Assembly: GCA_964252035.1 (NCBI GenBank)
Contig: OZ176203.1
Origin: Podarcis erhardii
Taxonomy: Eukaryota
Strand: one strand, 5' to 3'
Length of the DNA stretch: 64,000 nucleotides
A program made the translations under genes and the position numbers. Below, piece by piece: positions 1-64,000 of the stretch. The notes beneath the pieces were generated by a model. That model did no database searches. It worked only from the letters and a program-made list of their open reading frames with translations, and was not told the DNA's origin. Numbering within the stretch: the first letter of the stretch is position 1; every line of letters begins with the position of its first letter.

Positions 1-59
1 AGCGGCGCCCAGCCTCGCGCCGCTGGCCGGCAGGATCGAGCAGGACAAGGCCGGCCAAG
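1..59 (+). CDS. ARX: ARX exon 1, 3' end only (truncated by window start)
   Basis: Frame from position 2 reads AAPSLAPLAGRIEQDKAGQ-G, comparable to human [21 protein letters not shown]. Donor CAAG|GTAAGC at 59|60 is phase 1, as in human. Confidence 0.88.
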
Positions 60-1238
60 GTAAGCCCAGCCCAGGGGGGCAGAGGAAAGAGCAAGCGGGC
101 CTGCCAGGCAACTTCGCTTCTCCGGGCAGCTCCAGCGAGCTCCGCGGAAATCCTGCGCCCGGAGAGCGGGCCTAGAGCGCGGAGACCCCCTTGCAAGTGG
201 CGTGGATGGGCGCGTGGGTCTGAGATGCAGGCGACCCACCGCCCAGGCGATCAGGAAGGTTAGGGGGCAGAAACGGACTGGGAGGAACTCCGCTTCCCCG
301 CCACTCTTGGGGTCTCTTTTTTGCCTTGCCTTCCACCACCAGCTGCATCCCAGGCACGCCCGGGTCGCCTTTAGCTTGCTTGGGGAGAAGGGAGGTGGTG
401 CCCCAAATGGGGCTCTCCTCTTATTTTTTTGGAGAGGGTGGGTTGAAGGAAGATAAGTAACGGCGGCAAGTCAGCAGGTCCCTGGCGCGTCTTTTCCGTT
501 GCTGCTTCGGCGGCGCCTTTCCGCTGCCAGGCCTGCTTGGGAGGGCGAATAGCTAGGGCGTCCTTTGGCGGGGCTCCCGGTTGTAAAGAAGTGGGGCTCC
601 GGGTAGAATGTGTTTGGAGGGGACAGAGAAAAAGCGTTTCCCCCCCCCCAACACGCATATATAGAGTTTTAAAATATTTTAAGCCTCTTTCTCTCCGGCC
701 TTCCAATGCATGGGGATCTTCGGGTGCCCGCAGAGCCGCTGGAAATGCTTTTGACGAAGCCGACAGGTGTCAAATTGTCGGCTAGAGGAAGGGGACTTTT
801 AATGAATGCACTTAAAAGAATAGTAATGTTAATAAGTCAACTAGTTGGAATAAAAACTAATGCGGAGAACAGTTAGCTTTTGCTTTCGTCCAGACACAAT
901 CCTCAAATTTATCTCTCCGTACAGTTCCTACAGGGGTGGGTTTTGATAGAGCTTTCTGTGAAGGATGTTGGTCTCGGGACGGGAAAGGGAGACGTCGAGA
1001 GATTCGACCTGGTTTGGCAAAAATAATTGCAGCTGCCCGCCTAGAAAGTTGAAAGCATCTGGGCTAAATGGGGGGGTGTATTTACACCCGGGCCCCCCAC
1101 GCACAGTCTGCCCTTTGCTCCGAGTCCCGGGGCCCGTTTCTAGATGCAGACTGAGGGTCCCCCGGCTGGGCGGCAGCGAAACGTGCCCGGCCAGGTCGGT
1201 GATGGGTGCGTGTCTGTCTGTGTTCGTCTCCCCGGCAG

Positions 1239-1944
1239 GACCGGCCAAGGGCAGCCCCGGGGGCTTCGAGGCTGCCGAGCTGCACCTGCCGCCCAAGCTG
1301 CGCCGCCTCTACGGGCCCGGCGGGGGCCGGCTGCTGGCGAGGGCCGAGCGGGTAGAGGCGGGCGCCTCGTCCTGGGACTCGCTCAAGATCAGCCAGGCGC
1401 CGCAGGTCAGCATCAGCCGCAGCAAGTCGTACCGGGAAAACGCGCCCTTCCCGCGGGCCGCTGCCGCCCTCGACGAGCTGTCCAGCGGAGGAGGAGGAGG
1501 AGGAGGCGGCGGCCTCGACGGCAGGCCCGGCCGAGACGACGAGTTGCTGGACGACGAGGACGACGAGGATGACGACGACGACGACGAGGAAGAGGCCGAG
1601 GAGCTGGACGAGGAGCTGGAGGACGACGAGGAGCTGCTGGCCGAGGCCAAGGAGGCCCGGCGGGCCGCTGGGGGCCCCGTCGGCGTTGTCGGGGGACCTG
1701 GCGCGGCGCCGGGGACGGAGGGCGCCGACGGCTGCTCTCCCAAGGAGGAGCTGCTGCTGCCCGTCGACGAGCTGGTGGAGGGCAAGGACGGCGAGGACAG
1801 CGTGTGCCTGTCGGCCGGCAGCGACTCCGAGGAGGGGCTGCTCAAGAGGAAGCAGCGCCGCTACCGCACCACCTTCACCAGCTACCAGCTGGAGGAGCTC
1901 GAGAGGGCCTTCCAGAAGACGCACTACCCGGACGTCTTCACCAG
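1239..1944 (+). CDS. ARX: ARX exon 2 (N-terminal region, acidic tract, start of homeodomain)
   Basis: Acceptor CTCCCCGGCAG|GA at 1238|1239 (phase 1). Encodes [41 protein letters not shown] and [55 protein letters not shown]. Donor AG|GTAGGT at 1944|1945. Confidence 0.97.
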
Positions 1945-4844
1945 GTAGGTGGCGAGGCGGTTGGGGAGGGGAGGGGGCAGCTGCCCAGCTTGGGGGTTCC
2001 GCGTGTCCCCAGGGCGCAAAGCGAGGTCAGCTGGTGCGGCTCCCCTGGCCACTCTTCGCTCAAGTTAGACGGGGCTGGAAGGAGACAATCAGTATAAACT
2101 CTTAAGATTAAAATCGACGGAGGGGTGTCTACGGGCAGAATCGGAAGCCTTGGGACTTGGGGATAAATGTACACGGCAAGAAGAAAAAGTGCGCGCGCCT
2201 GGGGATAACTTGGGAAGCTGTGAAACTGACGGAGTGGGATATGTTGGGAAATTCCCTTCTCCCCCCGTTGTGTCCCAGGGCTTTATTCAATCCACTCCGC
2301 GTCCAGAAGAAAGTCATTCTTTTTTTGAGGTTCCCTCTCCTCAGAAGTCCAGACACCCCATCCTTAGGATAGGAGGCGAGAGGGGCTTGTGTGGCTCAGC
2401 CCGAGTTCGCCGGCAAAGGACAGGTTAGAGGTGGGTTTTGGCCGCGTCTTTGTCAAACCCTCTCCGGGGTCTATTTTTGCCTTGATCCTCTGGCTAGTCT
2501 GTCGGGTATCAGTTTCAGCGCTCTCGGTGGAAGCTGGAGCGCTGCCCTGCCGCAGGGAAGCCCCGTGCGTATATATAGATAGATATAGTTTTGAAAAGAT
2601 CAAAGTATTCCGCTTGAGAGGGCTAAAAATATGGGACGAGAATGGCAGCTTGCTTGGAAAGCTTTGGCAGAAGCCCCAAGCGCCCTAAGCGTCCGCCCGC
2701 CGGTTCAGGACGTTTCTGGGCACCGTCCAGAAAGAAAAAAGAAAAAGATTTTTTTTAAAAAGGGGGAGGGAATCCGGAGGGAGAAAGTCATTCTGATCCA
2801 TTGCCTTGGCCTTGAGGTCTGCTCCTTACAGGGGTTTGAAGCAGAAGCCTAACCGGGCACGCTTACTTTGAAAGGAACCGGGCTGTTCGTCTTCCCCTGA
2901 AGCGCTGTATCAGACGTGTATCAGTTTGATCCGAATTAAAGCGGTGTCAAGTTGCATTTGCGCTTTCAAGGGGGAAATCCCTGCCTCCCGTTAACTAGAA
3001 TCTGCTTGGGAGACGAACTTAATTGCAGTGAAAATGACAATAATGCAAATCCCCATTTTGTTTGCAAGTCTGTGCCTAAGTGGTTTGGTGGGTTTTTAAT
3101 TTTTAAATCACTCGGTATCAGATCCTTTCCTTTCCTTTGGATTCCCCCGTACTCCTAAAATGCTCCCATTTGCAATCCGGAGAAAAGGAGCGGAGAGCAT
3201 AACGCTATTAACGGGGTTACGCTCTCAATAAGTAGGCGAATTTCGTTTTGAGCTGCAAAGCCTCTTCTGCGAGGAATTCCTTTTACTGCATCCGGATCCG
3301 AGAAGGGTCGCTTTCAGCAATATTTGTAGCAAAGGTTTTGCTATTTACCAAGAGGAAAGGAATTACTGATCCTCAGAATAAAGAGATTCGTTTTGGCTTC
3401 TTATTAAGAGCGACCCTAATTCCCTTCCATATTCTACCCCTCCTTGGGGCTGCAATCCGGTTCCCATTTTAACAGAGTAGCCCACTGAAGTCGGTGGGAT
3501 TTACTTCCGAGGAGACCCACGTAACTCAGTTTATTGCACTGTTAAAGTCGTTAGCCAAGGCTCGCCTCACCTCTAATATGGGGGGTGGGGAAGAGTATTT
3601 CCGTAGAAATGGGATGGGAAGCAGCGTTTATTTCTTGGCACATTTGCTGGAATCTCCTTCGGAGCCAGCGGGCGTAAGACGCAGCTTCGCCGGCGTGGCA
3701 CAGGAAATCACCGGGATCCCCTTGCTTAGGAAACGGAACTGCCGGCTTGAGCGAAAGCTGCTGCCTTGCTTTGCCTCGCAGCCACTCAAGGCAACGGCCT
3801 GCCTAGGCAGCGCCCTTCCTCTGGAAGCCCGAGCGGCGTATGCTCCGATTTCGCTCGGAAAGGTCTTTGCAGTGGAATGTGCCGGCTGAGGCTGGAGAGG
3901 TTTAGCCAGGCCGCTCCTCCCATGGCGCACATCGGGGCAGAGAGGCTTTGGGGCGGCCATCTCTGTGAGGAGCCAGACCCTCGGGCTGGAGATCTTTTTT
4001 TTAAAAAAAGAAATAGTTGGCAGTCTGGAGGAGCTGGGCAAGGGCGAGCTGGTTCTTCCGCTCCAGCCCGGCCAGGCTCCCTCTCTGGCCAGCGCGGCGC
4101 TTTTCTTCCTAACGGAGGGAGAGCCAATTATCCCGGGAGCTCTCATATTCGAGGTAAACAGATTATAAGCAGTTTTCTAACATAGTAATGGTTTCCGATT
4201 TGCCTTAATTGTTGCAATAATAATCGCAATGAAGGGCTCGCGTTGCAGCTCAAAGGATCTCCTCTGTGCCGCGGCGCGGCGTTTGGAGGGGGAGCCTTGC
4301 TCCGGCGCGCGGGGCTGCGGGCCTTGGCCGGGGTCGCGGCCCTTCCCAGCAGACTGTCAAAGCCCCTGCTCGCAAGTTTTCCTCTTTTCACTTCCTCCAA
4401 ACATTGTCCCCTTCGTAACAACAACGGGAGGAAAGGTATTTTTTTTGGGGGGGGGGAGGGACACGCAGATCAAAACAAGAAACTTGGGAGGTGTTTTTTT
4501 TTTCTAGTCTGCTTTGTGCACCCGATTTCAAGCTAGCCTTCTCAGGATGTGGAGAGTGAAACGCTTCCTGGTTTGGGATATTAATTTTTTTGCGGGGAGT
4601 GGGGGTATTGGGGGCATTCCGGGGCGATCCAGCGTCAGTGCCAGTAGGAACTGGAGCGAAGGGTAGGAAACTGGCCTTGTTTGGGACTTTGCATGTGGAT
4701 GGCTCTCCCCTATATGGGCAAAGAAGGAAGGAGGAGTAGTAGCCTTCACCAAGGCGGTGAGCCGCGGGACCCTTTCTTTCCCGCTACCCCGCTTCACAGG
4801 GCCTCACCTGAGCGTGTGTCTTGTTGTGCTTGTTTCCCTCCCAG

Positions 4845-4890
4845 GGAGGAGCTGGCGATGCGCCTGGATCTGACCGAAGCCAGAGTGCAG
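4845..4890 (+). CDS. ARX: ARX exon 3 (46 nt, homeodomain)
   Basis: TTTCCCTCCCAG|G GAG GAG CTG GCG ATG CGC CTG GAT CTG ACC GAA GCC AGA GTG CAG|GTGAGT = (R)EELAMRLDLTEARVQ. Same length as human exon 3. Confidence 0.98.
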
Positions 4891-5229
4891 GTGAGTCCAG
4901 GGGCAGCTGCGATGGGGACTGGGAGCGCTCTCTCGGCGGGCTTGGGGTCCCCGCAGGTGGGGAGGGAGAGGAAATATTGTTTAAGACCCTTGAACCCAAA
5001 CAGGCGCTCGCTCCTTCTCTCCTCCCCCACACCCCCAAATTAAGACCAAACGCTGGGTGATGGGTGCCAGTCTGCCCTTTCCCTCGTTGAAACCAGTTAA
5101 TTTCGTTCCGGCTCTGTACGGGGGGGAGCAAGCCCCCAGCAGCTTTCCTTCTGCCCCCTTTCCACCCCCACCCCGATGAAAGAACTAGCTGTGGTTGTCA
5201 GCCCAACGCAGCGAGAAGTAGGTATTTGC

Positions 5230-5900
5230 CTGCGCTCTCAAATGGCCCATCGGGCCTCCATCAAAGGGCACTTTGGCGCTCGAGCAAACAGGGAGGGGCT
5301 GTTTGGTTTCCTCTCCGCTTGGCCCGAAGAGAGTCAGCTAATGCTATTTGATTTCCTCGATTTTGTTTTTGGCTCGACGGTGCAATGCTATTAGAAGGTG
5401 TTTGCTCCCCCACCCCGAGCCTGGAGGCTACGCAGCGCGGAGAGCCAGGCGCTCCACTCGTCCCTCTTCGGCCAACCCCCCGACAGATGGCGGCGGCCTT
5501 TTGCCTCCGCGCAAATCACTTTACACTGAAAGTCAGGCGCGGCGAAAGCATCATAAATTCCATATGGCTCATTTAATACACAACAGCTTCTCGCATTAGA
5601 GGGGCTAATGAAGAGCCCGGTCCCCTCCTTTCTGTTGACACATTTCTCCATTGTCAAACAGAGATGTGACAGCAAATCAGGATTTTCAGCTCAGGGGAAT
5701 GAGTCGTGGGAAAGTTAAATAACTAAGAGAGAGACAGAGACAACCCCCCTTTTCTTTCTCGCCCTCCCTTCCCTCCCTATTCAGTGGAGAAGATGTAATT
5801 AAGGGGAATATGAATTATTAGAGCCCCTCGGTTTACCTTTGGGTGTACTCAAACTTATTAATTCAATAAGAGAGGGGGAATTTGCAGTGGGGCCAAGTTG
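5230..5900. promoter_or_regulatory. Candidate conserved enhancer in ARX intron 3
   Basis: Non-repetitive and motif-dense: ATCAAAG 5260, CTCF-like CCGACAGATGGCGG 5480-5493, TAAT/ATTA and TGTCA/TGACA sites at 5540-5680. Confidence 0.5.
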
Positions 5901-6125
5901 CTAATTGAGTTGGAAACGGAAAAGACGCGCCGAGACGCCACGTTTGCCGTTGCCTTGAGCCGCAGTTCCTAGGCTGGCTGCGCTGGGACCTTCCTATAGG
6001 CGAGTGGAGCAACACAAACGAGAAGATGGTCCCGGTCTCCCTGCCCCCTCCCCCCCCCGAATATGTGGCTCTCTTTCTCATTTTCCCCAACCTATTTCCA
6101 AATAATTGCCTCCTATGGAAGCCGA

Positions 6126-7610: not shown

Positions 7611-7631
7611 CGTCGTCGTCGTCGTCGTCGT
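7611..7631. repeat. (CGT)7 microsatellite
   Basis: Seven perfect CGT units read directly. Confidence 0.95.
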
Positions 7632-7663: not shown

Positions 7664-8050
<387 letters not shown>

Positions 8051-8726: not shown

Positions 8727-11352
8727 TGTGCAAAGCTCATGGTACCCTCCTGTTCCCTAAATGGATAGAGATAACTTTAAAGGAAAAGGCCAGTCACTGG
8801 CATTTGCATTTAGACCATGATCTTAAGCTCACTGGCTGGAAGGTACTCCTAAGATTTTCTTCTAGCTAGATGGCTTGGCCACATAATATTATTTAGGTGA
8901 TTGGATGACAGTCCGTTTATTAGAATAATCTTAACTTTTAAAATGGTCTACGTGCGTTTTAACACATTCATTTTACCTTTCATCTTTGTTGATATTTGAT
9001 CCCACACTAAATAGTCACAGAAAAGCATAAAATGAAATCGAGAAAGGGGTTTAAAAAATGAATAAAGACAACTTAAATCCACTGAAAAGTCACAGCAGTG
9101 CTGTCTAGTTTACACCTAAACGGAAAACCAGGCTTGTTAGTCAAGGATAAAATAAAATAAGTGATACTGCAGCTACCTTTCTCTAAACAATAACCAAACA
9201 ATTAATTTAAAGAAGTCAATAGGTAATTATAAAGTGACAAAAAAGCATTGTCGGGATTTATGGAAGCCGGAGAGAGGTTGAAAATGGAAGGGCAAAAGAA
9301 CTGCAGTGATGTCTCTACTGATGAGAACAAAGAAGAGATAGATTCATCGCAGGCGAGACGCCACTTAACACAATTATGTGTTGGAGGAGGGTTGGGGAAA
9401 ATCCAAGTAAAATTTAGTTTTGTGTCGTGGGGGAACGCGAGAGCCGCCCAGCTACAACGAAAGCGTTTCTGCCTTTCCCCTAAGCCCCCGAGTGACTCAG
9501 TTTCCCTCAAGGCAGACAGGCGGCTACGGGGTTGTCACGCCCCCTACTTGCCGCCGTGATTCTACACTTGGAGCGCTTCTCTCTGGCTGCATCAGCCGGA
9601 GCCCTTGCGCTACCTCCCCTTGCGCCCCCCATCAGATTGAAAAATGAGTTGTAAAATGCTTACTAAACTGCCTGGCTAATAGGCTGTGCGATCAAAATAG
9701 GCAGGCGACGAAAAAAGAGAGCGAGGAAGTAGTGAAGGGAGCAGAAGAGGAAAGCAGAGACTTTCCTCCTCGCGCTTCCATCTTGCTCTTAAAATGCGAA
9801 GTTTTTAGGAAAGCTTTTCGCCTTCCATAGAAACTGCCTTCTGAAAAGCCAAGCCACTGTGCATATAGGGTTCCCCGTTTTGCTATTTGTGTTTTTTTAA
9901 AAGAAAAACACCCTCGGAAATCGTAGCCTATAAGAGAGCAGCAAGATGCAGACCGTCCCACTTCAGGGCTGAGCTGCGCGAAGAATTTCAGGAGCAGAGA
10001 GTCGGGGAACCCCCCCTCCCCGCGCCCAAGTAATCCTCCCCAAGGCCCTCCCCGCGCCAGCCAGCCAGCCAGCCAGCCAGCCCGCAGTCCGGGAGCTTAG
10101 GAGGCTCCGGGCTTAGTATGTAGCCCCTGTTGCCTTCCAGGCCCACAGTTCAGTTCCTAGCCGTGATGATGTCAATAATCACCTCCTTGGTTAATGGAGA
10201 GTCTGTATATCTCGACGTGCCAGTCAAGGGGGTCAGTTGCTCTCTTCAGAGCGGCTGCTCCGGGGAGAGGTAAGGAAGGAAAACTAGAGGGGAAGGCATT
10301 TCCAAGATTGTGTCATTGAGCCGGGATGCTAGGGTTGCCGGAGAATAATTGGCATTCCACTGTGCGGAAATCCACAGGGACGGCGCGCCCTGCTGGGCGT
10401 GGGCATCCGCCCCGCGAAGGAGCCGAGCGGCAGACACCGCTTCGGGCATCCAGGACCTCTAATAAGGCGGGCCGAGGAAAGTATAGACATCGGAAGGGCA
10501 AGGGGAGGGGCGCCCGAGAAGCGAACGCGAAGGACAAGGGGAAAGAGCCCGCGGAGGCAGCGGAAAGAACCACCGCTGTAGCTTGGGGAAGATGGAAGTG
10601 GCGGGAGAGGAGAGGGAAAAGTCTCGATTGTTACTACTATTTATTATTAGCAATAGTTTTTTAAAAAATATTATTCTCTCTGATCACAGTATAAGTCGCA
10701 GGCTCAAGCGTCGCCTGCCAGCGAGCTCCTGTCACTAGCAAATGGGAGAGGATTAGGCGCCTTACAGACAATCTCGTTGACTGGGCGTTTCTCTTCCAAC
10801 CCCGCCTGGCTTATGCTGCCCCGAGAAGGGCCGCGAGTAGGAACCGGCCAGACCTTAAGCTTGGAAAACCCAGGATTCGAATCGAGGCCCGGGAGGGAAC
10901 AGAGGCGGGACCTTGTTTTGCACACCGCCCCGGGATCCAGACAGGGTGAAGGGCGGTATAAAAGCACTGATCAAATACATAAAGAGCATGCGGCTGTTGC
11001 CCGGGTCGGGATTGGCCGCTCTTTCACTCGCAGCCCTCTAATTCTGGGGTAGCCAACTTGACGCTCCCCATAAAGTTGTGGAACGACAAAGCCCAGGAGC
11101 CCCCCGGCAACGGCTCAGTAGTAGTGGGAATTGTAGTCTCAACTGTATGCGGAGGGTCGCGGGTTGGGCTTTCTCCGCCTTAAATTGTATAAGCGGAGGT
11201 TGAGAGTCCTCCGGAGGCCTGTTTCCTTGCCTTTGAAAGTGGGTTTGCCCTTGAATGGACTACAACGCCCATGAGCCACACTCCCTGGGCCTGATGGGAG
11301 CTGGAGTCCAGCAGCCCCCCGGCCTGTTTTAAAAGTAGCCTGAGGCGGATGA

Positions 11353-11739
<387 letters not shown>

Positions 11740-41844: not shown

Positions 41845-42499
41845 TAGGCACATTTGAAAAAAATCCATAAAAGCTAACCTATGAAATGAGAGAACACTGA
41901 ATCCATTCCCTTGCTTGGGATGCTACACATAGCCAAATAAATGCCAAAAAAACCACACCATCAGATGAGTTAATTGTGAAGTGCTTGGTGGCATAATAGA
42001 ATTCATTAAACCAAGCACAGCGAGCTCCCTATATACACATATGCAAGGAAAACATTGACATACCTGATCCTTCTATTATTATTTTGCAAAAGGTTTCAAA
42101 GAAAGCCAGTATAAACAGCTGCCATATACAGCTAGTATTTGCCTTACAAGCAGTAAACCAAAGGGTCCCTTTTCCATTCACAAGCAATGCTGGCAGAAGG
42201 AAAAACAGAGGTGGTGTTGAAGGGTAAGAGAGCAAAAAAGCGGATAAATTCCATTTGCGCTATTATAAAAAAACCAGAAAAGTGAAGCCAGTCGTTGAAG
42301 AGTGAAGATAAAGAGAAGAAAACAGTAATCTTGTTACAGAAACCAGAGAATTATGCTCTTACATGCATGCTCTCTCTCTCTTTTGCTTTCACACTGCACA
42401 AGCTCTAGCACCCTGAACAACTTACTCTCCTGCTATTTCCAGCACTTTAAAGAAACTTTTCAACATTTGTTTGACACATTTTTTCAACACCAAGGTGGA

Positions 42500-43920: not shown

Positions 43921-45554
43921 TGTGGGGAAAGGTCTTGATCCATTTCAAGAGAAGGAGATCAAAACTGAAATGAACAGGAAAGCTGTTTCAGTTGGGTGAG
44001 TTCTTCGCAAAGGAGCGCATCCCTGGAACACACCACAGTCTCTGGAGACAAATGAATAGAAACCAGCTGATTTCAAAACATGGTTCCTAAGCCATAATGA
44101 TGCTCTAAAGCATCATAGAATTGTAGAGTTGGGAGGGACCCCAAGGGTTATCAACCTGCTGAAATGCAGGAATCTTAGCTAAAGCATCCATAAAGAAGTT
44201 CCTGGCACTGTGGTAAGGGCACATTTTAAACCATTTTGATTATTGAATTTAAGAAAGGACGGCAAAGACAAAATATGGGGGCTTTGCAGATATTTAAGAA
44301 GGTCCTGAAAATACCCGAGTGTTAGTTACCCAGGTAACAGCTTCAGTCGATATAGGACAGGTATATAATATAGTAACCCCCATTCCAGGTTACTGATTCA
44401 TTCCCTATTAATAATCTTCACAAGTTAAAATTTCCGTATCAAAACTTTTCTAAACTATTTTTATTTGAAATGAAAACAAAGGTACACATCCATTGGGATG
44501 GTAGATGTATGATGAGTTTTTGTGCGTTATTTGTTAAAAAAAGAAATAATATATGATATAGCTACAGAGGAATTTGAATATGCCCCATTTTTTCTAATAT
44601 GTTGGCATGCCATTATTACAGGAATTGCTATACATAGAAAGGTTAAATCTATAATTTAATATCCACGCTTCATTGGAATCCTATGATAAAAAGCTAAAGC
44701 AATCTGCAGCCATCTTCTATCTTTCAAAACTTATAAACACATGCTAATCTCCCCATAAAACTTGCCTCACTATAGTCTACAGAAGAAAAGCCTATCTTTT
44801 TTCATTATTTTAAAGATGAAAAAATAAAATAAAGAAAAGAAAGACACATACAAAAGAAAAACAGAATGACAGTGATGTTTTAGTTTACACTAGATATGGC
44901 AACACACGCAAACTGTCAAAACTAAGGAGTGAAAAAAGCTGTTATCAAGCAACTGTCAAGAGAGTCCTCTGAGATTTGGAAATCTTGTGTTTATTGTAAC
45001 TACTGCACATTACACAAAGAAAGAAACATCCCTCTCCTTACCGTTGCTGCTAAATATCATGCAAGAGAACATAGACTTCTTCCTTACTATTTAGATTAAT
45101 TTTTTTCTCTATAATTCTGTACTTGACAGTACTCCTCCCCTTCTTTTAAGTTTTTCTATTGTACGGTCAAAGTTCAGAGGAAAACGCAAGGCTACATCAA
45201 GCATTACTTCATTTTCAACAACTGTCAACATCCATTTCATGTTGTTAACTTGTTGTCCATTTAAGAATGGAAACTTAACACCAAGAGGAATTGACAAAGG
45301 ATTTCTAGCTTTACAGCAGAATAAAGGTAGTATGGAAAGGATATTTAAGGTATACCATTTATGTTATGCTCCGGAGATGAAATATGGGAATATTTTGTAT
45401 TTGGAGTAACAATTAAAAAGGTTCAAATCGAAGGCAGTATTCTACATTAAACCTCAAGTTTTTAATTTTTAAGAAAAATTACTGACTGCTGGACAAGAAC
45501 TTATACTCTGCTTTATTATTTGCATTTCCCTCCTCCTTGACTTTGACCCAGTTA

Positions 45555-46820: not shown

Positions 46821-48859
46821 TTGGACAACTGCCATTATCCCTGACCACTGGACCTCTGTAATTGCCAACAATGGTTTTGCTACCAAGTACTAAGTCATCT
46901 TTTGCAAAAGGATCAAATATTTATTTCACTCATTATAATGCACATCAATCTCTGACTTTTGTCTTCTGGGATTCTGGGGTTTTTCCTGTTGTTATTCTGT
47001 CTCTCATAGCTACAATAAACCTACCATTAAAATTATGGACTGGTTATTTCTTTGTCAGAGGGCAAACGGGCAAATTTAGCAGGGGATCAAATACTTTCCC
47101 CCTTCACTGTATGGACAGATAAGCATTAACAAAAAGTCTGTTTTCAGAACCTATGTCTCACTTTTATACCAGCCACAGCAGATTGCGTGTAACACATGTG
47201 AAATTCAGCCTTAAGGCTTATTAAATTTGGTTCAGAGTTCAACTGTATTGTTGCTCAATGGACAAATTAAAGCTGTATGTTAGAAGTCAGTTCTGAAGCG
47301 TATAATCCCATACGATACAGTAAATCACCAAAAGGCACAGTTCACCATTGTTTGTCATTGCTCCTTTCTCGAACCATGTAACGGTGAGCGGGGTTCAGTT
47401 GTATAAAGACTGCAGTCAAGTCAACAACCTGTAGTTACAAGTTAAAGACCTTCCAATTATTTCTGTAGACACTCATGCTCTGGAAATTGTTACTAGCTGA
47501 AAGGTCCATTCAATAATTTACTATTCCTTAAGCCTGCTAGTGAAGTTCAATGTAAAGATTAGCAAGTCTTTAAGGCTTAATACTTTAATTACAATTAGGT
47601 ATAAAAATACATGATTGCACTGCATAAAATGTATGTGAGTTGGGCTGCAGTACAAAGCTCTCTCTCCCTTAGGCCCGTATTAAAATTGCATACACAAATC
47701 CATGCTTCAAGGCCTCATGTGCAAGGACATAGAAGTCTTTGGCAGTAATCATCAAAGGATCTTACAGGGTTGGAAAAATGTGTGTCATTATGGCAGAAAT
47801 TTGACATATTGAAGTTGCCTACCATCAATATGAAGAGGTCATTCCATTAGCTATGGAATTTAGAGTGGTATTGGAGGATCTACCAGGCCTATTTCACTGC
47901 ACATGAAAATTCAATACCAGAATTGCTAAATTGAGTTAGCATCATCAGTGGAAAAATATGCTCTATTTCCTATTATTTATGAAGCCCTATCCTTTTCTTT
48001 CTAACCAATTACATTCCCTATCATTTCCAAAATATACGAACTGTTTTCAATCAACAGATTTCTTTATTATAGTGTACAGCATACTTGTTACTGCCTCTTT
48101 TCTATATTGAATCCTTGATTGGACAAGCATTTTGAATATAACATGGACTGTGATTGCACATATAAAACAAATTAAAGCTGCCAATCTCTTTTTGGAGGCT
48201 ATTCTTTATATACACAAAATACCAGGGTGGAGTATCCTGAGTGTATTTGCTTAGGAGAAATTAGGAAGGAGGGAAGAAATATTCACGGAAGAATCAGGAA
48301 GACTTTCACTTTCTGATAAAAAATATCTGTCTTTCAAAGTTTTATTTAACAATTCTCTTTTTAAAAATGGTATTATTAAAAGCATATTAAATCATTTTGG
48401 TTTTCCATGGCTTATTTTTGTTTACACTTATTTGGCTCTCCAAAAATAAATAACAGCTTTTATTCCTATACTATGTGAAAACAACTACTATTCCAGAGAA
48501 GCTTGTCTAAGTGCTTGACCATGCTCAGTAGGATTGTTTACCTTCTGTTACCAAGACTTTTATATATATATATCAAAGTCATTCAACATACAATAGATTG
48601 GATTCAGAGTTCCAGTTATGGAACAAGGCACCATTGGGTTTCAGCTCTCCCTTCTCCCTGCAGGGTCCTCTAAATTATCTCCAGTGGGGAGTTGGGGGTT
48701 GGTACTCCAGAAGTTCAAGGGAAGCTGCAAAGGGAATTGGTAAATATTGCCTCCATTCACAGTTGCACCCTGTTTATCAGACTGTGAGCTGACAATCATC
48801 AGTGGGCCTTGAGCAACTTCCAGGTGTACCTCGGTACCAGGTGTATTCACACTTGCTGT

Positions 48860-49385: not shown

Positions 49386-51514
49386 CGTCACCTTATATTT
49401 GTTATACATAGCTGTTCTACATAGGCTTCAGATGTGAAAAAGAGGTTATGATGCTTCTTCTATTTTCAGCTCATGCCAGCCTCAGGAGAAATTAGTTTTT
49501 ATTAAATTGAACAAGGTTTGGGGAAATTATTGTTTTTATTTTTATTGAAACTGGGTAAATTTTAGTGAAATGCTGAGGACAATGAGCTCAAATAAATTTT
49601 GTGGGCGCTAGAATATCCAACTGCCCTCTTCAGATTTACTGCCTGGTTCAACACTCAACATACGGACAACTAATTTTTGCAGACATTTTACTTAAACAGC
49701 GAAGCTGAGAGCAAGTCAAAGTCCTTATGACGTTGATTAAATAAAAATTTAGATTCAAAAGCAAGATGACTACCTGCAGTGAGCTAATGAACCAAGCAAC
49801 TATGTGCTTCACTGAAACTATAAAGCAGCTTTAAAGTGCTTCAATAACCCTAGATTCTGTAATCAACAGTCTGTGTTGCTGGCCAGCCCAGTCTCAGATC
49901 TTGCTTTTTCAACTGAATGAGGAACTGCTTTCAGCCCTGTAACATGTGAATTGTCCAGCTGGACAAAGAAATGGATAAACATGACTCCTTGGATAGGAGG
50001 CAAGTGGGAAAGGTCTAGAAGATCTATATAGCTAGGAAATAGTAAAACAACACTAATGACTGTAGTAAGAGGAAAGGCTTTTTTAATAAAAAAACTTTCA
50101 TAATATTAGATCACAGAGGCTTCTGCTATGGATTATAGTTCATAGTGGGAGGATATATTTCATGATATTGTGCACACAGAAACAAATTAAACTACACAGT
50201 GTTTTTACAATTAGCTAGCTATATTATAACAGTATTTATATACCCCAGGTTGTCTTAGCAGTCTATAAACATACATTTAGTAAGGGCACTCAGACAAACA
50301 CACATTAGGTGTGCAACATAAAATCCTTAGTTGCTAGTTTCCTTTATTCATTTAATAACCCCATTAATCTTCACGGCAGGGTTGTGTGATGAGGAATGCA
50401 AACTAGAGGTAAGAGGATACAGGGGCACTGGCATTGCCCAACCTTGCAAGCCAGCCAGAATGTACTTACCAACCTCCTTGCTTCTAAAATGTATCTTTCC
50501 CAAGGACCATCAGCATAGTTGTGAAAGTGTCTGGCAAAAGGCACAAAATGGACCTTGTATATTTTCTTAATTTCTTATAAGAGCAGCTCTTTCACCAAGA
50601 GCTTCCAAGTTGGCTGGGGAAAGTTTAATTTTTATATGTTGCAGAGATGAAAATCCATGAACTTTGTAAGCATCTTAACACATTTTCCTCTTGGGGGGGT
50701 GACTTTTCTGTTTTATATCTACCCAAAAATAGGAGTTAGATGAAGTTTCAGAAATGACCAGTTGATAAGGCACTCTGTTCTAACCATAAGTTAGTGCTGC
50801 AGAGATTAAGGGAGGGATGCTCTGCCACCACCCAGACAGGGAATCAAGGCCACTAGAAGACTGTTCCAAACAAGATCATAATGGGAAGGAGGAGGGAGAC
50901 CACACTTGCCCCACCTATTCCCCAGAGAAGCAGCAGATGTAGTGAGCTTGCTTCCCCCTTTCTGTGCATGAAGGAGCACTTTGCTCCAACTGCCAGTTAC
51001 CTGGGACTGCAGAACTGAAGGAAAGGAGGCACATACTGGTCTCCTAGCCAAGTGCCCTGGACCATTAGCAGGCTGCACACCCTCCCTCCCAAGAAAGCTA
51101 TTGCAACAACAGAGAGATCAGCCTAGTCTCATCCATCAGCCAGTGGAACAACAGCTGCTCCAATGCTTGGCTTCCTCTTCCCTCCCTCCTTTTTGCTTTG
51201 CTTTGTGTCCTGTTGATTATATTGTAAGCATATAATCAGAGACTACCTTACTGTTAAATGCATGCATAGTGTTCTAAGTGCTGTACCAGCATTAAAGTGT
51301 TTACAGGTTTTGTTCTGGTGAACATAGCTGCGGCTATTATTATCATTATCAATACACCTTTTTATCACTGACAAGGATAGGTTTGAACCGTCTTTTACTC
51401 TCCTTGGTTTCTTACTGCGAAATTAGCAAACAAATTATGAGAAGACAAAATTTCTGGTCTTCTCTAATTCCCAGAAACTAGAGAAATGGAGGACAAGAAA
51501 TCCAGAAAGTAAAG

Positions 51515-55520: not shown

Positions 55521-56964
55521 CGTACAGTAATCGTTCAACTCTGGCAGATGTGCTGTTTGAGAACTTTTATGCAACTCCACCACCCCCACCCTGAAACGTT
55601 CACTGTGGAAATCTTGCAGAAATTAAAAACAACATTGTGCAATATATACACAGCTAAACATTCATCTCAATGGAATTTGCACAGAAGAAATTCTCAGCAA
55701 ACTGTGCCCAGATGATTTATATTACGATGAACTGACCAATAGGCTCTCTTAAGGGACATAAATGAACACTTTAGATTATATAGGTAGTACATAGCTGTGG
55801 AATATATATATACTTTTTGTTAATTAGGTATCCAATAGTAACAAATTATGCACCTATTACAGATGACCTTTGGAGTCACTCAAGGTACAGTCACAATCAT
55901 GCATTAAAATCTGCTTTTCACTGTAATGTGTGAATGTATGAAATTAAATGAGGCTTGCAATGTAATCAGTGTGGTTGGCTGCCTTAATATATTCCATTTC
56001 AATTTCAAATCACCACAAGCCAAGAGTGATGAATCTAATTTGATCCGTTGCTCACAAAACCAGTGAAAAGAGTTGTTAGAAGCCTTATCAACAACTGGCA
56101 CCATGGCCACATTTCAAAAGTGGTTAATATTATTTTATTATTATGTTCTAATATCAATGGAAGTCTTAAAATATTCAAACCCAAGAAAAATAAAATTCCA
56201 CAGTGTTAGAAAGGCACACAATATTAATCTAGCAAAAACTATACGCTTTAATTAAAATCCACAGAACCCAGTAACTTCAGAATAAAACCTATAATATTGA
56301 TAAACAGTAGGAAGTAGTTAGTCCCAAGAATAGCATCCTAGTATAACTGTGCGTATGGAAACTCATTACTTATAAAAATGTATTCACCACATCACCAGTA
56401 TCTTCCATTAATATCATTATTATTGTTTGATAGCATCTAGTGATGTCCCTCTGCTGACAGAGGGATTCAGCAATGGCTGCTGGCAATGGAAAGGGGAGGG
56501 TGGGGATTTTTCCAATTCCGCACAGCTATTATGCTGCACCACTTCCCATGCTGTTTTGAAGGGTCTCCTAACTCTTTGGAGAAGATTGGGAGGCAGTGCT
56601 ACAGGGAGGAGGGGGAATCAGAAAAAATTAGACTTATTCTCCATTCCACTTTCAACGTCCTCTGAATCAAAGTGCTTTCTGACAGCAAAGGAGCACTACT
56701 GGATACAACCCATATTAATTCACCCTATTGGATTCAGTAAATTAATTGATTTATCTATAACTCAAATGTGCATATGGGTAAAATAAATATTTCTGAAGAA
56801 AGAAGCACAGTTTTGTTTTTAGATGGCGCATACAATGGCTGAGTTCACACATAAGGCCAAGCCATCATTTGTTTAATTGTGGTTTAAAACCATGCGTTGC
56901 TGTGGCTTACAAGGCTTGCTTTCGCTATGGCTCGTTGTTACCTAACAAAAACTGTCCAGGCAGA

Positions 56965-58820: not shown

Positions 58821-60626
58821 AAGTGTGAAAGTGGACAAAAACCTCCCCATGCTTAAAAATATATATGGGAGAATGCCTCTTTTAAGACGGTACTTACAAT
58901 CTGTGGTTTTTATGAGAACTTTTTTTAAAAGCATTCTGTCCCTGCTGCCCTGGTATGTACTTTTAATTGGGATAGCCATTAAGTCTTTTATGTATCCAGA
59001 TTATTTTTCTAAACTTTTAAAAGTAAAGTAAGACATATGTGCACATATGCACCCGCATCAAAAAGCAAAACCATGCACAAGTCCAATCAAGAACAACAAT
59101 CCACACACAATTTAAGTTCTTCTATTTGTAGAACAGTCCCTCCCCCAAACTTCCTATAACTAATATAGAGAGGAAATAGTTCCTACGGGGATTCAAATGA
59201 AATATTTCAACTCTAATGTACTTGTTACTATTTCTGTTACTAATCCAACCCCATAGTTATAGCCCACTCACAGCAATAAAAACATGAAGCAGCCACATAA
59301 ATAGCTCAGTATTTTAATTCCAAGTTCATAATATCTGACACTAATAGGATTATTTGTTTTTATCTAGTAAATAAAATAGCTCAGTCTGTCACTCACTTCC
59401 TTGTATTCTTTTTTGTCTTGCTGCATACATCTTTTGTAAAATGAAAATGTCTGTTTTAAGTGGAAATAATACGGTACATAACATTTTCATGTCAAAATAA
59501 CTGCATTCTTAGATTTTGTGTTAAATAATTTAAGACAGGAAAATATTTTGATACACATTTGACAGTTATAATCCTAGCAAGACCAACATCTTCATAGGTT
59601 AAAAATAAGGTGAAAATAAAGAATGCAAGGTAACTGGACAAGTTACTAGATTTTTATTCTGAAAACCTGGGTGCAAACCGAACTCAACGAAAGCAGCAAG
59701 ATGCATTGCTGAACGCTGATGAATTCAGTGAATTTAAGAGGCCAGCTTTGACACTTTTAGTAAAGGTCTCTCTATAAAAAAAGGTAAATGAGCTTATTCT
59801 AGTTTTTTACCAGTATCATAGGACATTCATGTAAATGTGCAATAGGCAGCCTTTGATTAAATGGTGGGAAAATAAGAGCAGGATGCTCACTTTATTACTC
59901 TAGTTTATACTTTAATTTTTTTTACACAACAACAACTTGGTAAGCGTATTTGGGACATAATTCTCAAAGTTCAAATCAAGTGTTACCCATTTTAAAATAA
60001 GGGAGGGAAACAGACAGATGTGAAACAGGGATATTAAATGGAGCATAATACAAAGACAAAAATGACATATCAATTTTGCTTTACATTTTTTCTAGACTAT
60101 AAGGCACAACATTATTTTATTCTCTGCCACAGGTTGTAGTCAGAAGAGGTGCATCTTTCAGTGTTATGAGGCAGACTGTGCCTTTTCCCAAAAGCACATT
60201 AGTCTGGCATGGAGAAGGAGCCCGTGAGTAATCAAATCTGACACCAGCCAGCTGCGATGGTACAATTCCCACAATGCAATTCAGAACTGGGTATTGCACC
60301 ACGGGAATCATAACATGAGCGATGTCCAGCAGCAGTCCAAGCCAAGCAACTGATTGGCTTCCAACAGTGCCAGTGCCTTACATACCTATTCAGAAGGAGG
60401 GTGTGAATGGTGAATACAGACTTGCTCACGCCTCCACCACTAGGGAATCTGGTCACTCGCTGTATGCTGAGGGTCCATTCAAGCCTGGGGATTGGCCTTG
60501 AGTGCTTCATAAACAAGTTGTGATGCGCTCTTTGGATCCTAATATCCAGGTAAAAGAATGCTGGATAAAGGGAGTCTCACTTTGTAGAACATGTTGACAC
60601 AGAGTTTTCATTTTGGAATGTTTGTA

Positions 60627-60852: not shown

Positions 60853-62171
60853 TACTTAATACAAAAAAACAACCACCTTATATAACCTCTGTCATGAGGT
60901 TCCCACCATTCAGCTCTACCTATTTTAAGACTGCTCCCTCCTACTGACCAAACATTCCAGCCAGATTCTCCAGTGCTTCAGTTTGAATTAAATTTGATTT
61001 AAACTGTTGTGATTTGTCCTGGGACCTTAAGAAGGATGGATAAGAATTTAAACAACAACAACAGCAGCAGCAGCAGCAGTTCAGAGCGATAAGTAGTTTA
61101 CATTGCTGTCATGAAAGGTGGCTTAATTTTTATTTCTATATTTGTAAGTGGCAATGTTAGCTATTAGTGCAAAAACAGCAACAGAGCACCCATATAAAGG
61201 ATTATTGTACTTTAATGTATTGCTTATTAACATGACAATGGGCTTTCCCATATGAAAAGTGCCAAGAAGAGAATCCAGCTAACAACAACCCGAGTCTCAA
61301 GAGATTATAGTATAAAAGATTCTTTGGAGAAATCAAGGCTAATGACTGCTCATAAAAATGATGGCAACTACAATTTATATACCAGCTTTAATTTCAGTGT
61401 TGGTCTTGTTTGTCTGCATGTTATTAGGTCATGAAAGAGGTATGGAAGCCAACTCAGAGAATTCACACTTGAGTTAGGCTTGAAACCTAGAACTCCCAAA
61501 TCCAAATGTAATTGCTGACCATCTGACAACCCCACCTCTCAGTGCTCTGTTTAATTTTAACTCCAAATTATTTATGCTTCATATATCAGCAACGGCTGGC
61601 ATTGTACCACAGAGCTGCCTTCCTGACAGTGGTGTTGCTGCTGCTTGGCTGGGCAGTGGCTGGACTGCCTAGCGGGGCAGGAAGAAAGATTGACTCCACT
61701 ATTGTGCCCATGCAGTCCCAATCTCTCTGCCACCACCCCTACCCCTGCGCCATCTCCGAACGCCAGTGGCCTAATGGCAGCCCTGTGGCACTGCCCCTCT
61801 GGACCAGCCACTCCTGTTGAGTACGTTGCTAGCTATTAAAATTTTTGTGGAAGCAACTAATGCCTTGACCTTCTGAGAGATAACAGTAGCAGCAACAAAA
61901 CAGACATAAGCTCCAGGAAAATTCAGAAGAAAACTGTAAAGCAAAGCAAAATAACTTTATCATACTTTCATAATTCATTAAAGGCAGATGTCGGCAATAT
62001 TTTTAACCATTTGCTGGCTTCAAAAGATGGAGGCCAGGAATTAAATTAAGATGTCAGATGTTAGTAAAGAAAATACGGTAGTAGTTCACCAATTGGTCTT
62101 TTAAATGATCTCCAGTTCATAAAATAAGATTTTAGAATTTTTTTACTAGATAATTATACTTCCTGATTTTG

Positions 62172-62246
62172 TAATTAGTGGAACTACATGTAATTACATA
62201 ATAATTATGATGGTAATTACGTAATTAAGATGTATAATTATGTAGT
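62172..62246. promoter_or_regulatory. Cluster of six TAATTA homeodomain sites in an imperfect palindrome
   Basis: TAATTA at 62172, 62191, 62202, 62214, 62222 and 62235. Function is inferred. Confidence 0.4.
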
Positions 62247-64000
62247 AAAAAACATTATGGAAATAAAAACTATCAACTGTATAACCACAATACATCTACA
62301 AAAAAATTCTCTCCCATTGCTTTAAAACTCTATTTTCCCACGAAAAAAATCAGTGATTAGTCTATATCAACTACCTGATGGCAAAATAAAGCAAAATCTT
62401 ACAGATATTAAGATACTGAATTATCCTCTTAAGACTTAATTATACCAATTTAGTAACAATCAAATGTATATATTTTGCTCAAAATCATTGTAAATTCACA
62501 AAAATCCAAATGAAGCAAATTAAACAAAGCCACAGTGAAATCAACATTGTAGATTTTAATATTTCTTAAATACTGATGTTCAGAATACATCAGAAAATAT
62601 ATGACGTATGCCCAAGAAACAGTTCTCTAAGCGATTGGTTCATGTTGGATTCGTATTACAGAAACTTTATTCCATTCAAAAAGCATTGCATATGCTATGC
62701 TTTTGTGTCTAGCAAATGTATCCTGTTACTTAGGCACAATTTCAAATTGGGCCTGAATCTGCCTACTTTTCCAGGAATATTTAACTTGAGTATATGGCAT
62801 TCTTTTAGTTATCAGCAAGCCAATGAACCTTGGGAAGGGATTCTGCAGCGAGTTATTCATCTCTAGATTGACTGGACATGAAAAATAACCATAATGAGCA
62901 GTTTTACTAGTTGATGTTTGAGAGGTTGCCTTCAAAGCTACTTCAATTATCAACTTGATGATATAAATACTACCTTGCTATCTATATGCCAATTCAGCAC
63001 ACCCTTCCAAAGTACATGCAAATTCTTATGCTATCTCTTGCACCCAAATCTACTAGTAGTCTAAGTGTGGGAACTCCATTTTCGCTTCTGGAAACACCCT
63101 GTTCTAATGAAGCATTTCATTCTTAAGTTTCTTTCGAGACACAGCTGCAGCATTCTGCATATACTTTTCTGAGTAATTGTCACCTGCTAACAGAGACATA
63201 CTGAAGACCCACCCATTACTAGCTCTGAGAAATACTGCCACTATGAAAAGTCTGCCTGTAAAGCTTTCTAGCAATTCATCCATAAAAAAATCACTTTCAA
63301 TTGATATTTGGTACACCACAGAGGGAACACAGAGGGGGGAAACGATGTTTAAATTACAGGATACAAGCAAATATTCAAAGTTAGATTTTGTGTTTTGCAT
63401 GTAGGTCATACAGCCTAACTTTCATTTTTCTAAATGCAATTTTACAGTTTATTCATCCAGAAAGTAAACTGGGCATGTTTAGTATTTTTTTATGAAGGTG
63501 GGAGTGTAAAATGCTGCTGTAACTGTGTAAAAGTATTTACTTAGTATGCATTTAGTTTGGTTTATAAATCCGGTGTATAAAAATAAATAGCATGACGATA
63601 TTAATAAGTACTGAAATGCACTCTCAAGGTACAGACAATGCTTTTAATATCTGACATTGTTTCAATCAGAACATATCTCAATATAACCTAACCTTTCATT
63701 TTTACTTCAGGCACTATTCTGATACCTTTAGGAACTTCGCATTTCAATGTCAGAAAGCTCTGCAATTAAGGTGTTCTATATCTACTGCTGGGTTAGCAGA
63801 CTTTCAATGAAAAGGAATGGAAAAATGCAAGACTCAATAGAAAGTCAAACATGTACAGAAATTATTACTTCTGATCTGTTCTTCAAGATATCATTCTTCC
63901 CTGGCTTCTGTTGAGGTTAAGCTGCAGAGTTCCTGTCTATTGTTCGAAACAGAGCCTGATACTCTTAAGTAGATATGTTGTCACCCTTTCTTACCAGGCA

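What the first reader, a model, noticed from the sequence alone, without database searches (positions are those of the whole stretch)
1..64000. ARX regulatory block in a lizard: developmental gene tail-to-tail with a housekeeping gene whose giant last intron hosts its enhancers
Seen: complete ARX exons 2-5 on +, POLA1 last exon on -, and no recognisable penultimate POLA1 exon in the next 44 kb. Known: in human and mouse the ARX-POLA1 interval and POLA1 introns contain ultraconserved forebrain enhancers (VISTA hs121, hs122 and others), with POLA1 as bystander gene. Inference: the whole architecture is preserved in a squamate, so the unexplained unique islands in the intron are best read as ARX cis-regulatory elements.
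Basis: partly seen in the sequence, partly recalled or inferred. Interest (0 to 1): 0.7.

Follow-up and report, generated by a model that had tools for sequence, protein, structure and literature searches.

The report
Conserved ARX–POLA1 enhancer block, lizard
This lizard window holds the brain-development gene ARX lying tail-to-tail with the DNA-polymerase gene POLA1, whose roughly 48-kb last intron carries about 14 deeply conserved non-coding blocks; this layout is already well described in other vertebrates, so the finding is real but ordinary.

Summary
The window holds the last 59 bases of ARX exon 1 and complete exons 2-5 on the + strand. All introns have GT-AG borders, and exon 2 is 98% identical to Podarcis muralis ARX. 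The terminal coding exon of POLA1 lies on the - strand at 19616-19779. A spliced viper POLA1 C-terminal fragment matches only that exon, so no penultimate exon lies in 19780-64000. By collinearity with viper and pigeon, that exon sits about 3.5-4.3 kb beyond the window, which makes the intron about 48 kb.

Loci from gecko, cordylid, viper, two turtles, emu, pigeon, a bat and a catfish all show ARX and POLA1 convergent. About 14 collinear non-coding blocks in the intron align at 73-91% to viper and pigeon. One of them also aligns to the catfish, again inside its last intron. An intergenic block is 95-100% identical across amniotes.

The five N runs sit inside these blocks. Their lengths equal or nearly equal the spacing in other species, so the flanks are continuous. 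I did not read the letters under them.

The blocks show no codon periodicity and are 6.8-fold enriched in TAATTA. Reading them as ARX enhancers rests on homology with mouse and human work; enhancer activity was not tested here. The architecture is already known, so interest is low. The scan's other note on this window (s1-244797) covers one of these blocks.

The parts
1..59 (+). 3' end of ARX exon 1 (codons about 46-64), donor G|GTAAGC
   Evidence: Frame-2 translation is identical to Podarcis ARX residues 46-64. The cordylid CDS aligns to window 1-65.
1239..1944 (+). ARX exon 2, with the acidic region and the start of the homeodomain
   Evidence: 98% identical to Podarcis muralis ARX. Mismatches are 3-periodic.
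4845..4890 (+). ARX exon 3 (46 nt, middle of the homeodomain)
7712..8049 (+). ARX exon 4 (end of the homeodomain, alanine run)
   Evidence: 87% of mismatches fall in one codon phase.
11499..11739 (+). ARX exon 5 coding part with OAR motif and stop codon
   Evidence: Pfam OAR E 4e-9. 100% identical to Podarcis residues 429-508.
11740..12945 (+). ARX 3' UTR. Conserved block 12347-12945; AATAAA at 12821.
   Evidence: The exact 3' end was not measured.
4017..4332 (.). Conserved non-coding block in ARX intron 2
   Evidence: Gecko 88%, turtle 81%, cordylid 88%, bat 77%.
5216..5986 (.). Conserved non-coding block in ARX intron 3
   Evidence: Aligned in gecko, cordylid, turtle, emu, pigeon and bat at 78-86% (block average over 4788-5986). 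No codon periodicity.
10067..10454 (.). Conserved non-coding block in ARX intron 4
   Evidence: Turtle 87%, cordylid 89%, gecko 80%, viper 72%.
14200..14689 (.). GC-rich, CpG-island-like conserved block downstream of ARX
   Evidence: Gecko 83%, viper 86%, bat 79%. A 52-nt core is 85% identical to catfish.
15406..16724 (.). Intergenic ultraconserved-type block, including the masked stretches 15861-16008 and 16228-16479
   Evidence: 16009-16227 is 98-100% identical in 7 sauropsid species, 95% in the bat and 80% in the catfish. Mask lengths equal the orthologous spacing in 8 species.
18600..19615 (-). POLA1 3' UTR (conserved part 19060-19380). The distal end near 18600 is approximate.
   Evidence: RNA reads at 18550-19214. 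AATAAA at 18608, 18766 and 18797 on the - strand. Conserved in turtles and birds at 82-87%.
19616..19779 (-). POLA1 terminal coding exon with stop codon
20013..20164 (.). Conserved block in the intron just upstream of the last exon
   Evidence: Aligned in gecko, cordylid and both turtles; turtle identity 76-78%.
24799..25416 (.). Intron CNE 1
   Evidence: Emu 87%, viper 83%, pigeon 88%, green turtle 91%.
26053..28999 (.). Intron CNE cluster 2 (about 2.9 kb), including the masked stretch 27606-28544. Positional candidate for the hs121/uc467 orthologue.
   Evidence: Flanks are 75-89% identical (viper, pigeon, turtle, emu). Spacing across the mask is within 6-21 nt. The equation with hs121 is inference.
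37112..37254 (.). Short block shared with viper only
   Evidence: 80% over 144 nt.
42098..43737 (.). Intron CNE cluster 3, including the masked stretches 42650-42911 and 43274-43469
   Evidence: Viper 79-84%, pigeon 80-88%. Spacing is 198=198 in pigeon and 262 vs 259 in viper.
44576..45343 (.). Intron CNE 4
   Evidence: Viper 74%, pigeon 84%.
47586..48313 (.). Intron CNE 5. Its core 47949-48056 is also conserved in the catfish POLA1 last intron.
   Evidence: Viper 85%, pigeon 85%, catfish 85% over 110 nt with E 9e-28.
49627..50515 (.). Intron CNE 6
   Evidence: Viper 79%, pigeon 76% over a short core.
55822..56190 (.). Intron CNE 7
   Evidence: Viper 85%, pigeon 88%.
59227..59586 (.). Intron CNE 8
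   Evidence: Viper 73%, pigeon 79%.
61918..62507 (.). Intron CNE 9
   Evidence: Viper 79%, pigeon 85%.
63114..63707 (.). Intron CNE 10
   Evidence: Viper 75%, pigeon 77%.

Best explanation
The window is the 3' two-thirds of the ARX genomic regulatory block of a lacertid lizard. ARX, a paired-like homeobox gene with a CpG-island-rich body, converges on POLA1, a housekeeping gene. [quoted passage not shown] They most likely act as tissue-specific enhancers, chiefly for the forebrain and partly bound by homeodomain factors such as DLX. These would loop to the ARX promoter 20-65 kb away, while the POLA1 promoter does not respond to them. Because the enhancers must stay in cis with ARX, the tail-to-tail arrangement and the order of the elements have stayed fixed from teleosts to amniotes. 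Shown here: the gene models, the synteny, the conservation, the collinearity, the non-coding nature of the blocks and the TAATTA enrichment. Inferred: enhancer activity, ARX as the target, and identity with individual VISTA elements.
For: Gene models.

Synteny: ARX and POLA1 are convergent in gecko, cordylid, viper, hawksbill, emu, pigeon, bat and catfish.

Conservation: the blocks align with E values from 1e-26 down to 0, within otherwise unalignable sequence. Only 11-38% of non-coding bases align. Order is perfectly collinear for 15 of 15 viper blocks and 14 of 14 pigeon blocks. The catfish keeps the intergenic core and one intronic block in the same order.

Non-coding nature: there is no codon periodicity in the blocks, against 57-87% of mismatches in one phase for ARX exons. 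No Pfam domain was found in the eight long intron ORFs scanned, and Rfam found nothing.

Motif: TAATTA occurs 13 times in 8.2 kb of intron CNEs and 8 times in the other 34.6 kb, a 6.8-fold difference with binomial p 2e-5. Composition-matched control hexamers show 1.3-1.8-fold.

Target-gene features: CpG-island-like bins occur only over ARX and its 3' flank, as expected of a GRB target gene (PMC5728398).

Literature: uc467 lies in the last intron of POLA1 next to ARX (PMC1964772). A 41-kb duplication covering only the terminal POLA1 exon plus ARX contains hs121, hs122 and hs145, and deleting these enhancers in mice alters Arx expression and the brain (PMC8955779). DLX binds and activates hs119 and hs121 (PMC6750766). 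POLA1 carries 12 UCNEs, and 13 UCEs cluster at its 3' end (PMC3436827, PMC13513235).
Against: No functional data exist for the lizard: no chromatin accessibility, no reporter assay and no contact map. The ARX promoter lies outside the window. Published cloning primers for hs121 and hs122 have no match in the window, so equivalence with named VISTA elements is positional only. Mammalian sequence was compared only up to window position 16.5 kb, so lizard-mammal conservation of the intronic blocks was not shown here. The most conserved cores are masked and could not be examined. Motif enrichment rests on 21 sites.
Confidence: 0.85

Rival explanations
1. The conserved intronic blocks serve POLA1 itself, for example in splicing or processing of its long last intron, as alternative exons, or as POLA1 enhancers. 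On this reading ARX is only a neighbour.
For: The blocks lie inside the POLA1 transcription unit. A conserved block lies 230-390 nt upstream of the last-exon acceptor, at 20013-20164, and could plausibly relate to splicing.
Against: A further block with the same extreme conservation lies outside POLA1, in the spacer at 15406-16724. In the catfish the last intron is only 5.9 kb yet keeps a block. Mouse deletions of the orthologous elements affect Arx expression and the brain (PMC8955779). RNA reads show no exon use in 19785-20420. GRB bystander genes typically carry a neighbour's CNEs in their introns (PMC5728398).
Confidence: 0.05
2. The blocks are unannotated exons of a protein-coding or non-coding RNA gene inside the intron.
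For: Public annotations have built short spurious gene models over such sequence, namely P0123, P0124 and P0127. Block 43470-43737 is open in one frame over its whole 89 codons.
Against: No intron block shows codon periodicity. The eight long intron ORFs scanned have no Pfam family, and there is no Rfam family. One open frame among 21 blocks times 6 frames is about what chance gives. The blocks are 0.3-1.5 kb long, without conserved splice-site-bounded ORFs.
Confidence: 0.04
3. The N runs are true assembly gaps of estimated size, so the window may be mis-joined and the 'giant intron' partly an artefact.
For: The scan's program labels them as assembly gaps with estimated length.
Against: Both flanks of every N run align to the same collinear stretch in other species. 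The N lengths equal the orthologous spacing exactly (148 and 252 in 8 species, 198=198 in pigeon) or within 3-25 nt. Viper and pigeon have last introns of 49.5 and 42.5 kb with the same block order. An independent DNA contig spans 17600-20420 without change.
Confidence: 0.03
4. The conservation reflects a regional mutational cold spot or slow neutral decay, not function.
For: None specific. The identity to viper (86.8%) and to pigeon (86.4%) is equal on shared columns despite different divergence times.
Against: The blocks are sharp islands. 62-89% of non-coding bases between them do not align at all, even to other squamates, and young SINE copies are interspersed. Blocks persist to a bat and a catfish. 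Equal identity at unequal distance is what constraint on a fixed set of sites predicts.
Confidence: 0.03

Closest known systems
Mammalian ARX regulatory landscape: VISTA enhancers hs119, hs121 (with uc467), hs122, hs145 and hs123
   Same: ARX and POLA1 are tail-to-tail. There is an extremely conserved element in the spacer and more in the last POLA1 intron. The spacer block aligns to a bat at 83-95% with identical spacing. The literature places uc467 in the last POLA1 intron, and places hs121, hs122 and hs145 within 41 kb that include only the terminal POLA1 exon (PMC1964772, PMC8955779).
   Different: One-to-one orthology of each lizard block with a named VISTA element was not established. 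Human sequence was not used, published primers do not match, and no mammalian sequence beyond the spacer was fetched. Enhancer activity in the lizard is untested. The lizard has more blocks in the last intron (about 14) than the handful of assayed mammalian elements.
Genomic regulatory block model: a target developmental gene plus a bystander gene carrying its CNEs, as reviewed for loci such as MEIS2 (PMC5728398)
   Same: There is an array of collinear CNEs spanning the target and the introns of a housekeeping neighbour. Synteny is conserved from teleost to amniotes. The target has a CpG-island-rich body.
   Different: Nothing differs in kind. Bystander status of POLA1 (unresponsiveness to the CNEs) is taken from the model, not measured here.
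UCNE/UCE catalogues: POLA1 with 12 UCNEs, and a POLA1/ARX 3'-end cluster of 13 UCEs
   Same: The cluster sits at the 3' end of POLA1. A lizard-bird block of 219 nt at 98-99% meets the spirit of the catalogue criterion, which I recall as at least 95% over at least 200 bp between human and chicken (PMC3436827, PMC13513235).
   Different: Those catalogues are defined on human coordinates. No mapping of lizard blocks to catalogue entries was done.

Membership tests
ARX orthologue (paired-like homeobox, aristaless-related) | Homeodomain split over exons 2-4, and a C-terminal OAR/aristaless motif | tested here: met
   Pfam Homeodomain E 1.4e-7 and OAR E 4.4e-9.
ARX orthologue (paired-like homeobox, aristaless-related) | Closest relatives are annotated ARX proteins, with full-length collinear exon matches | tested here: met
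   98% to Podarcis muralis ARX, and the top 120 hits are all ARX. tblastn covers residues 46-508.
ARX orthologue (paired-like homeobox, aristaless-related) | N-terminal octapeptide/engrailed-homology motif (exon 1) | not testable with these tools
   Only the last 59 nt of exon 1 are in the window.
POLA1 terminal exon | Encodes the C-terminal end of the Pol alpha zinc-finger/C-terminal domain, followed by a stop codon | tested here: met
   Pfam zf-DNA_Pol positions 153-186 of 186 (20.8 bits, below the 25.7 cut-off because it is a fragment). Xenopus Pol alpha C-terminus E 7.6e-9. 78% identical to the viper POLA1 fragment.
POLA1 terminal exon | Transcribed from the - strand and spliced at the predicted acceptor | tested here: inconclusive
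   14 RNA reads of a related species were laid. Coverage stops at 19784, and strand orientation is consistent with a - strand RNA. No junction was listed.
Genomic regulatory block (target ARX, bystander POLA1) | Cluster of conserved non-coding elements spanning the target gene and introns of a neighbour | tested here: met
   8.2 kb aligned plus 1.4 kb masked, which is 22% of the intron part in the window.
Genomic regulatory block (target ARX, bystander POLA1) | Gene order and element order conserved across distant vertebrates | tested here: met
   Nine other species, from gecko to catfish.
Genomic regulatory block (target ARX, bystander POLA1) | Target gene has long or multiple CpG islands | tested here: met
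   CpG-island-like 500-nt bins lie only in 1-15 kb, over ARX and its 3' flank.
Genomic regulatory block (target ARX, bystander POLA1) | Elements drive the target and not the bystander (enhancer activity, promoter contact) | not testable with these tools
   Known only from mouse and human literature (PMC8955779, PMC6750766).
Ultraconserved elements in the strict sense (at least 200 bp at 100% in human-mouse-rat) | Perfect identity with human, mouse and rat over at least 200 bp | not tested
   Human sequence was not to be used, and the likely cores are masked in the window. The unmasked 219-nt block is 95% identical to the bat and 98-100% to sauropsids.

The most novel reading that the evidence does not exclude
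Several of the distal intronic blocks (42.1-45.3 kb, 49.6-50.5 kb, 55.8-56.2 kb, 59.2-63.7 kb) may be ARX enhancers that are not among the functionally assayed mammalian elements, or may be restricted to sauropsids. The near-constant 42-50-kb length of the last intron in pigeon, viper and lizard, against 5.9 kb in catfish, may reflect a constraint on enhancer spacing rather than drift.
Probability: 0.2. Interest if true: 0.4.

Novelty: already known. Interest (0 to 1): 0.2.

Why it matters
The result gives a base-level map of the ARX exons, the POLA1 terminal exon and about 20 conserved non-coding blocks in a lacertid. It also shows that the window's N runs are exact-length masks inside the most conserved cores rather than assembly breaks. 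This is useful for annotation and for choosing fragments for reporter assays in reptiles. It does not change what is known, because the ARX/POLA1 ultraconserved cluster and its bystander logic are established in mammals, birds and fish.

Tried and rejected
(1) Motifs of the POLA1 penultimate exon recalled from memory gave no hit. They were superseded by real fragments.

(2) The large HMMER search with the 53-aa last-exon peptide returned no full-length POLA1, only fragments of 54-206 aa and one unrelated repetitive 631-aa protein. Two fragments (P0122, P0127) nevertheless carried the upstream exons and led to the 101-kb viper locus and the 108-kb pigeon locus.

(3) The X2 isoforms of turtle and alligator ARX are not on record for locus look-up.

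(4) Published cloning primers for hs121 and hs122 (PMC6750766) have no match with up to 3 mismatches in the window. Named-element orthology therefore stays positional.

(5) Rfam found no family in the window. Pfam found none in eight long intron ORFs.

(6) Dickel et al. 2018 (PMC5786478) is not held. Its results are cited second-hand through PMC8955779 and PMC5728398.

(7) SOX, octamer and E-box motifs are not enriched in the intron blocks.

(8) The exons were searched one by one by reference.

(9) The letters under the five N runs were neither read nor aligned in any species; only coordinates were used.


Full report
**What is in the window**

The + strand carries ARX. Frame-2 translation of bases 2-58 is identical to residues 46-64 of Podarcis muralis ARX and ends in a donor G|GTAAGC. 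The window therefore starts inside exon 1.

The remaining exons are:
- exon 2 at 1239-1944
- exon 3 at 4845-4890
- exon 4 at 7712-8049
- the coding part of exon 5 at 11499-11739

All have AG/GT borders and compatible phases. Pfam finds the homeodomain split over exons 2-4 and the OAR motif in exon 5. The word search with exon 2 gives Podarcis muralis ARX at 98%, followed only by ARX proteins of squamates, turtles, birds and mammals. The animal is therefore a lacertid lizard or a close relative. A conserved 3' UTR block (12347-12945) with AATAAA at 12821 marks the likely end of ARX.

The exons were searched one at a time.

On the - strand, 19616-19779 is the terminal coding exon of POLA1, with acceptor ACAG|GT and stop TAA at 19616-19618. 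It matches the last 34 positions of Pfam zf-DNA_Pol. It also matches the very C-terminus of Xenopus DNA polymerase alpha with E 7.6e-9.

RNA-seq raw reads of a closely related species (95-99% alike) cover 19595-19784 and 18550-19214 with the first mate on +. That orientation fits a - strand RNA in a usual stranded library. No reads fall in 19785-20420. Only 14 reads were laid, so this is modest support.

**The missing penultimate exon**

The large HMMER search with the 53-residue exon peptide returned only fragments. Two of them proved useful:
- P0122, from the viper Protobothrops, is a spliced C-terminal piece with 90 residues upstream of the last exon.
- P0127, from the pigeon Columba guinea, also contains the penultimate exon.

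Against the window, both match only at 19622-19759. Nothing else in 64 kb reaches significance.

Their genomic loci explain why:
- In the viper, the last exon is at L005 90873-91031 and the penultimate exon at 41199-41336, giving a last intron of 49.5 kb.
- In the pigeon, the last intron is about 42.5 kb.

The window's last collinear matches fall 3.5-4.3 kb short of those penultimate exons. The lizard intron is therefore about 48 kb, and the exon lies just beyond position 64000. The caveat is that 1397 intron bases are written N.

**The N runs**

All five N runs lie inside conserved blocks. For 15861-16008 and 16228-16479, the two flanking alignments are separated by exactly 148 and 252 letters in gecko, cordylid, viper, two turtles, emu, pigeon and bat. 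The other three runs agree within 0-25 letters.

The flanks are therefore continuous and collinear, and the N lengths are real. They behave as deliberate masks over the most conserved cores rather than assembly gaps. I used only coordinates, and the letters beneath were not read in any species.

**Conservation outside exons**

ARX-anchored loci of gecko, hawksbill turtle, emu and cordylid all show ARX followed by a convergent POLA1. So do the viper, pigeon, bat and catfish loci.

Only 11-38% of non-coding bases align, and they do so in sharp islands.

- **ARX introns:** the islands are 4017-4332, 5216-5986 and 10067-10454.
- **Spacer:** a GC-rich block lies at 14200-14689. The block 15406-16724 has a 219-nt unmasked centre that is 98-100% identical in seven sauropsid species, 95% in the bat and 80% in the catfish.
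- **POLA1 last intron:** the blocks are 24799-25416, 26053-27599, 28545-28999, 42098-42649, 42912-43271, 43470-43737, 44576-45343, 47586-48313, 49627-50515, 55822-56190, 59227-59586, 61918-62507 and 63114-63707. They align to both viper and pigeon at 73-88%, and some also to emu and green turtle at up to 91%. Block 37112-37254 aligns to viper only.

Order is perfectly collinear, for 15 of 15 blocks in viper and 14 of 14 in pigeon.

The catfish has a last intron of only about 5.9 kb. It still keeps the core of block 47586-48313 inside that intron (85% over 110 nt, E 9e-28). It also keeps the spacer core, with ARX convergent behind it.

**Are the blocks coding?**

No. In ARX exons, 57-87% of mismatches fall in one codon phase. 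The intron blocks show 34-41%, which is flat. The long intron ORFs scanned have no Pfam family, and Rfam finds nothing. Between the blocks lie eight copies of a roughly 250-bp SINE.

**How it most likely works**

The palindromic homeodomain site TAATTA occurs 13 times in the 8.2 kb of intron blocks and 8 times in the other 34.6 kb. That is a 6.8-fold difference with p 2e-5. Composition-matched control hexamers show only 1.3-1.8-fold, and SOX, octamer and E-box motifs are not enriched. CpG-island-like sequence is confined to ARX and its 3' flank, a property of regulatory-block target genes (PMC5728398).

The published record supports the same reading:
- uc467 lies in the last intron of POLA1 next to ARX (PMC1964772).
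- hs121, hs122 and hs145 lie within a 41-kb segment containing ARX and only the terminal POLA1 exon (PMC8955779).
- Deleting these enhancers in mice alters Arx expression and brain anatomy (PMC8955779, PMC5728398).
- DLX factors bind and activate hs119 and hs121 (PMC6750766).
- POLA1 is listed with 12 UCNEs, and with a 3'-end cluster of 13 UCEs (PMC3436827, PMC13513235).

The best reading is therefore an array of ARX enhancers lodged in the spacer and in the bystander's last intron, which locks the two genes together.

Conservation, synteny and non-coding nature are shown here. Enhancer activity, ARX as the target and identity with hs121 or hs122 are inferred. Published cloning primers for hs121 and hs122 do not match the window, so the equation of 26053-28999 with hs121/uc467 and of 15406-16724 with the spacer enhancers is positional.

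**Rivals**

- **Function for POLA1 itself:** this is unlikely, because one of the most conserved blocks lies outside POLA1 and mouse deletions affect Arx.
- **Hidden exons or RNA genes:** this is not supported.
- **Mis-assembly at the N runs:** this is excluded by spacing and collinearity.
- **A mutational cold spot:** this does not fit islands separated by unalignable sequence and young SINEs.

**Verdict**

This is the expected lizard copy of a well-documented vertebrate regulatory block, so it is already known and of low interest. The scan's other note on this window (s1-244797, 42500-43920) concerns one of these blocks. Its flanks are indeed conserved in viper and pigeon. Whether it is 'uncharacterised' could not be decided here, and SOX and octamer motifs showed no enrichment across the intron blocks as a set.

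Noticed in passing
window 20428-20686, 23565-23815, 33857-34102, 36229-36463, 40785-40838, 41601-41846, 57379-57643, 60616-60854: Eight copies (one partial) of a roughly 250-bp interspersed repeat, probably a squamate SINE, lie between the conserved blocks of the POLA1 intron. None lies inside a block.
   Followed up: partly
window 15861-16008, 16228-16479, 27606-28544, 42650-42911, 43274-43469: All five N runs sit in the centres of the most conserved blocks and have the length of the orthologous sequence in other species. They look like deliberate masks of ultraconserved (human-like) cores, not assembly gaps. The letters were not read.
   Followed up: yes
window 44576-45343 and 59227-59586 (L005 viper, L007 pigeon): On shared columns these two blocks are less like the viper (77% and 74%) than the pigeon (85% and 83%), although the viper is the closer relative. 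This may reflect relaxation or acceleration in the snake lineage. Over all blocks the two identities are equal (86.8% vs 86.4%).
   Followed up: partly
L010 (catfish Silurus meridionalis) 8328-14203, against L005 viper and L007 pigeon: The POLA1 last intron is about 5.9 kb in the catfish but 42.5-49.5 kb in pigeon, viper and lizard. The three sauropsid values are close to one another.
   Followed up: no
window 20028-20186; proteins P0123, P0124, P0127: Public gene models and ORF calls (Chelonia mydas 140 aa, a Logan contig 206 aa, Columba guinea 205 aa) join conserved intronic sequence to the true POLA1 last exon. These are annotation artefacts caused by the conserved non-coding blocks. The full-length POLA1 models of viper and catfish appear to end before the last exon.
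   Followed up: partly
window 19776-20420 (runs X1-X14): Fourteen small public data sets of two related species hold contigs only over the intron-proximal conserved stretch next to the POLA1 last exon. That is the pattern expected of sequence-capture (UCE or exon-capture type) libraries rather than RNA.
   Followed up: no
window 1239-1944 and 7712-8049: Lizard ARX exon 2 has a glycine run and a long acidic stretch, but no long polyalanine tracts at the places where, from my memory of the human protein, the disease-prone tracts lie. Exon 4 keeps a run of about 11 alanines.
   Followed up: no
window about 8700-8760: A short ATG trinucleotide repeat (read as a methionine run in one ORF) lies in ARX intron 4.
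   Followed up: no
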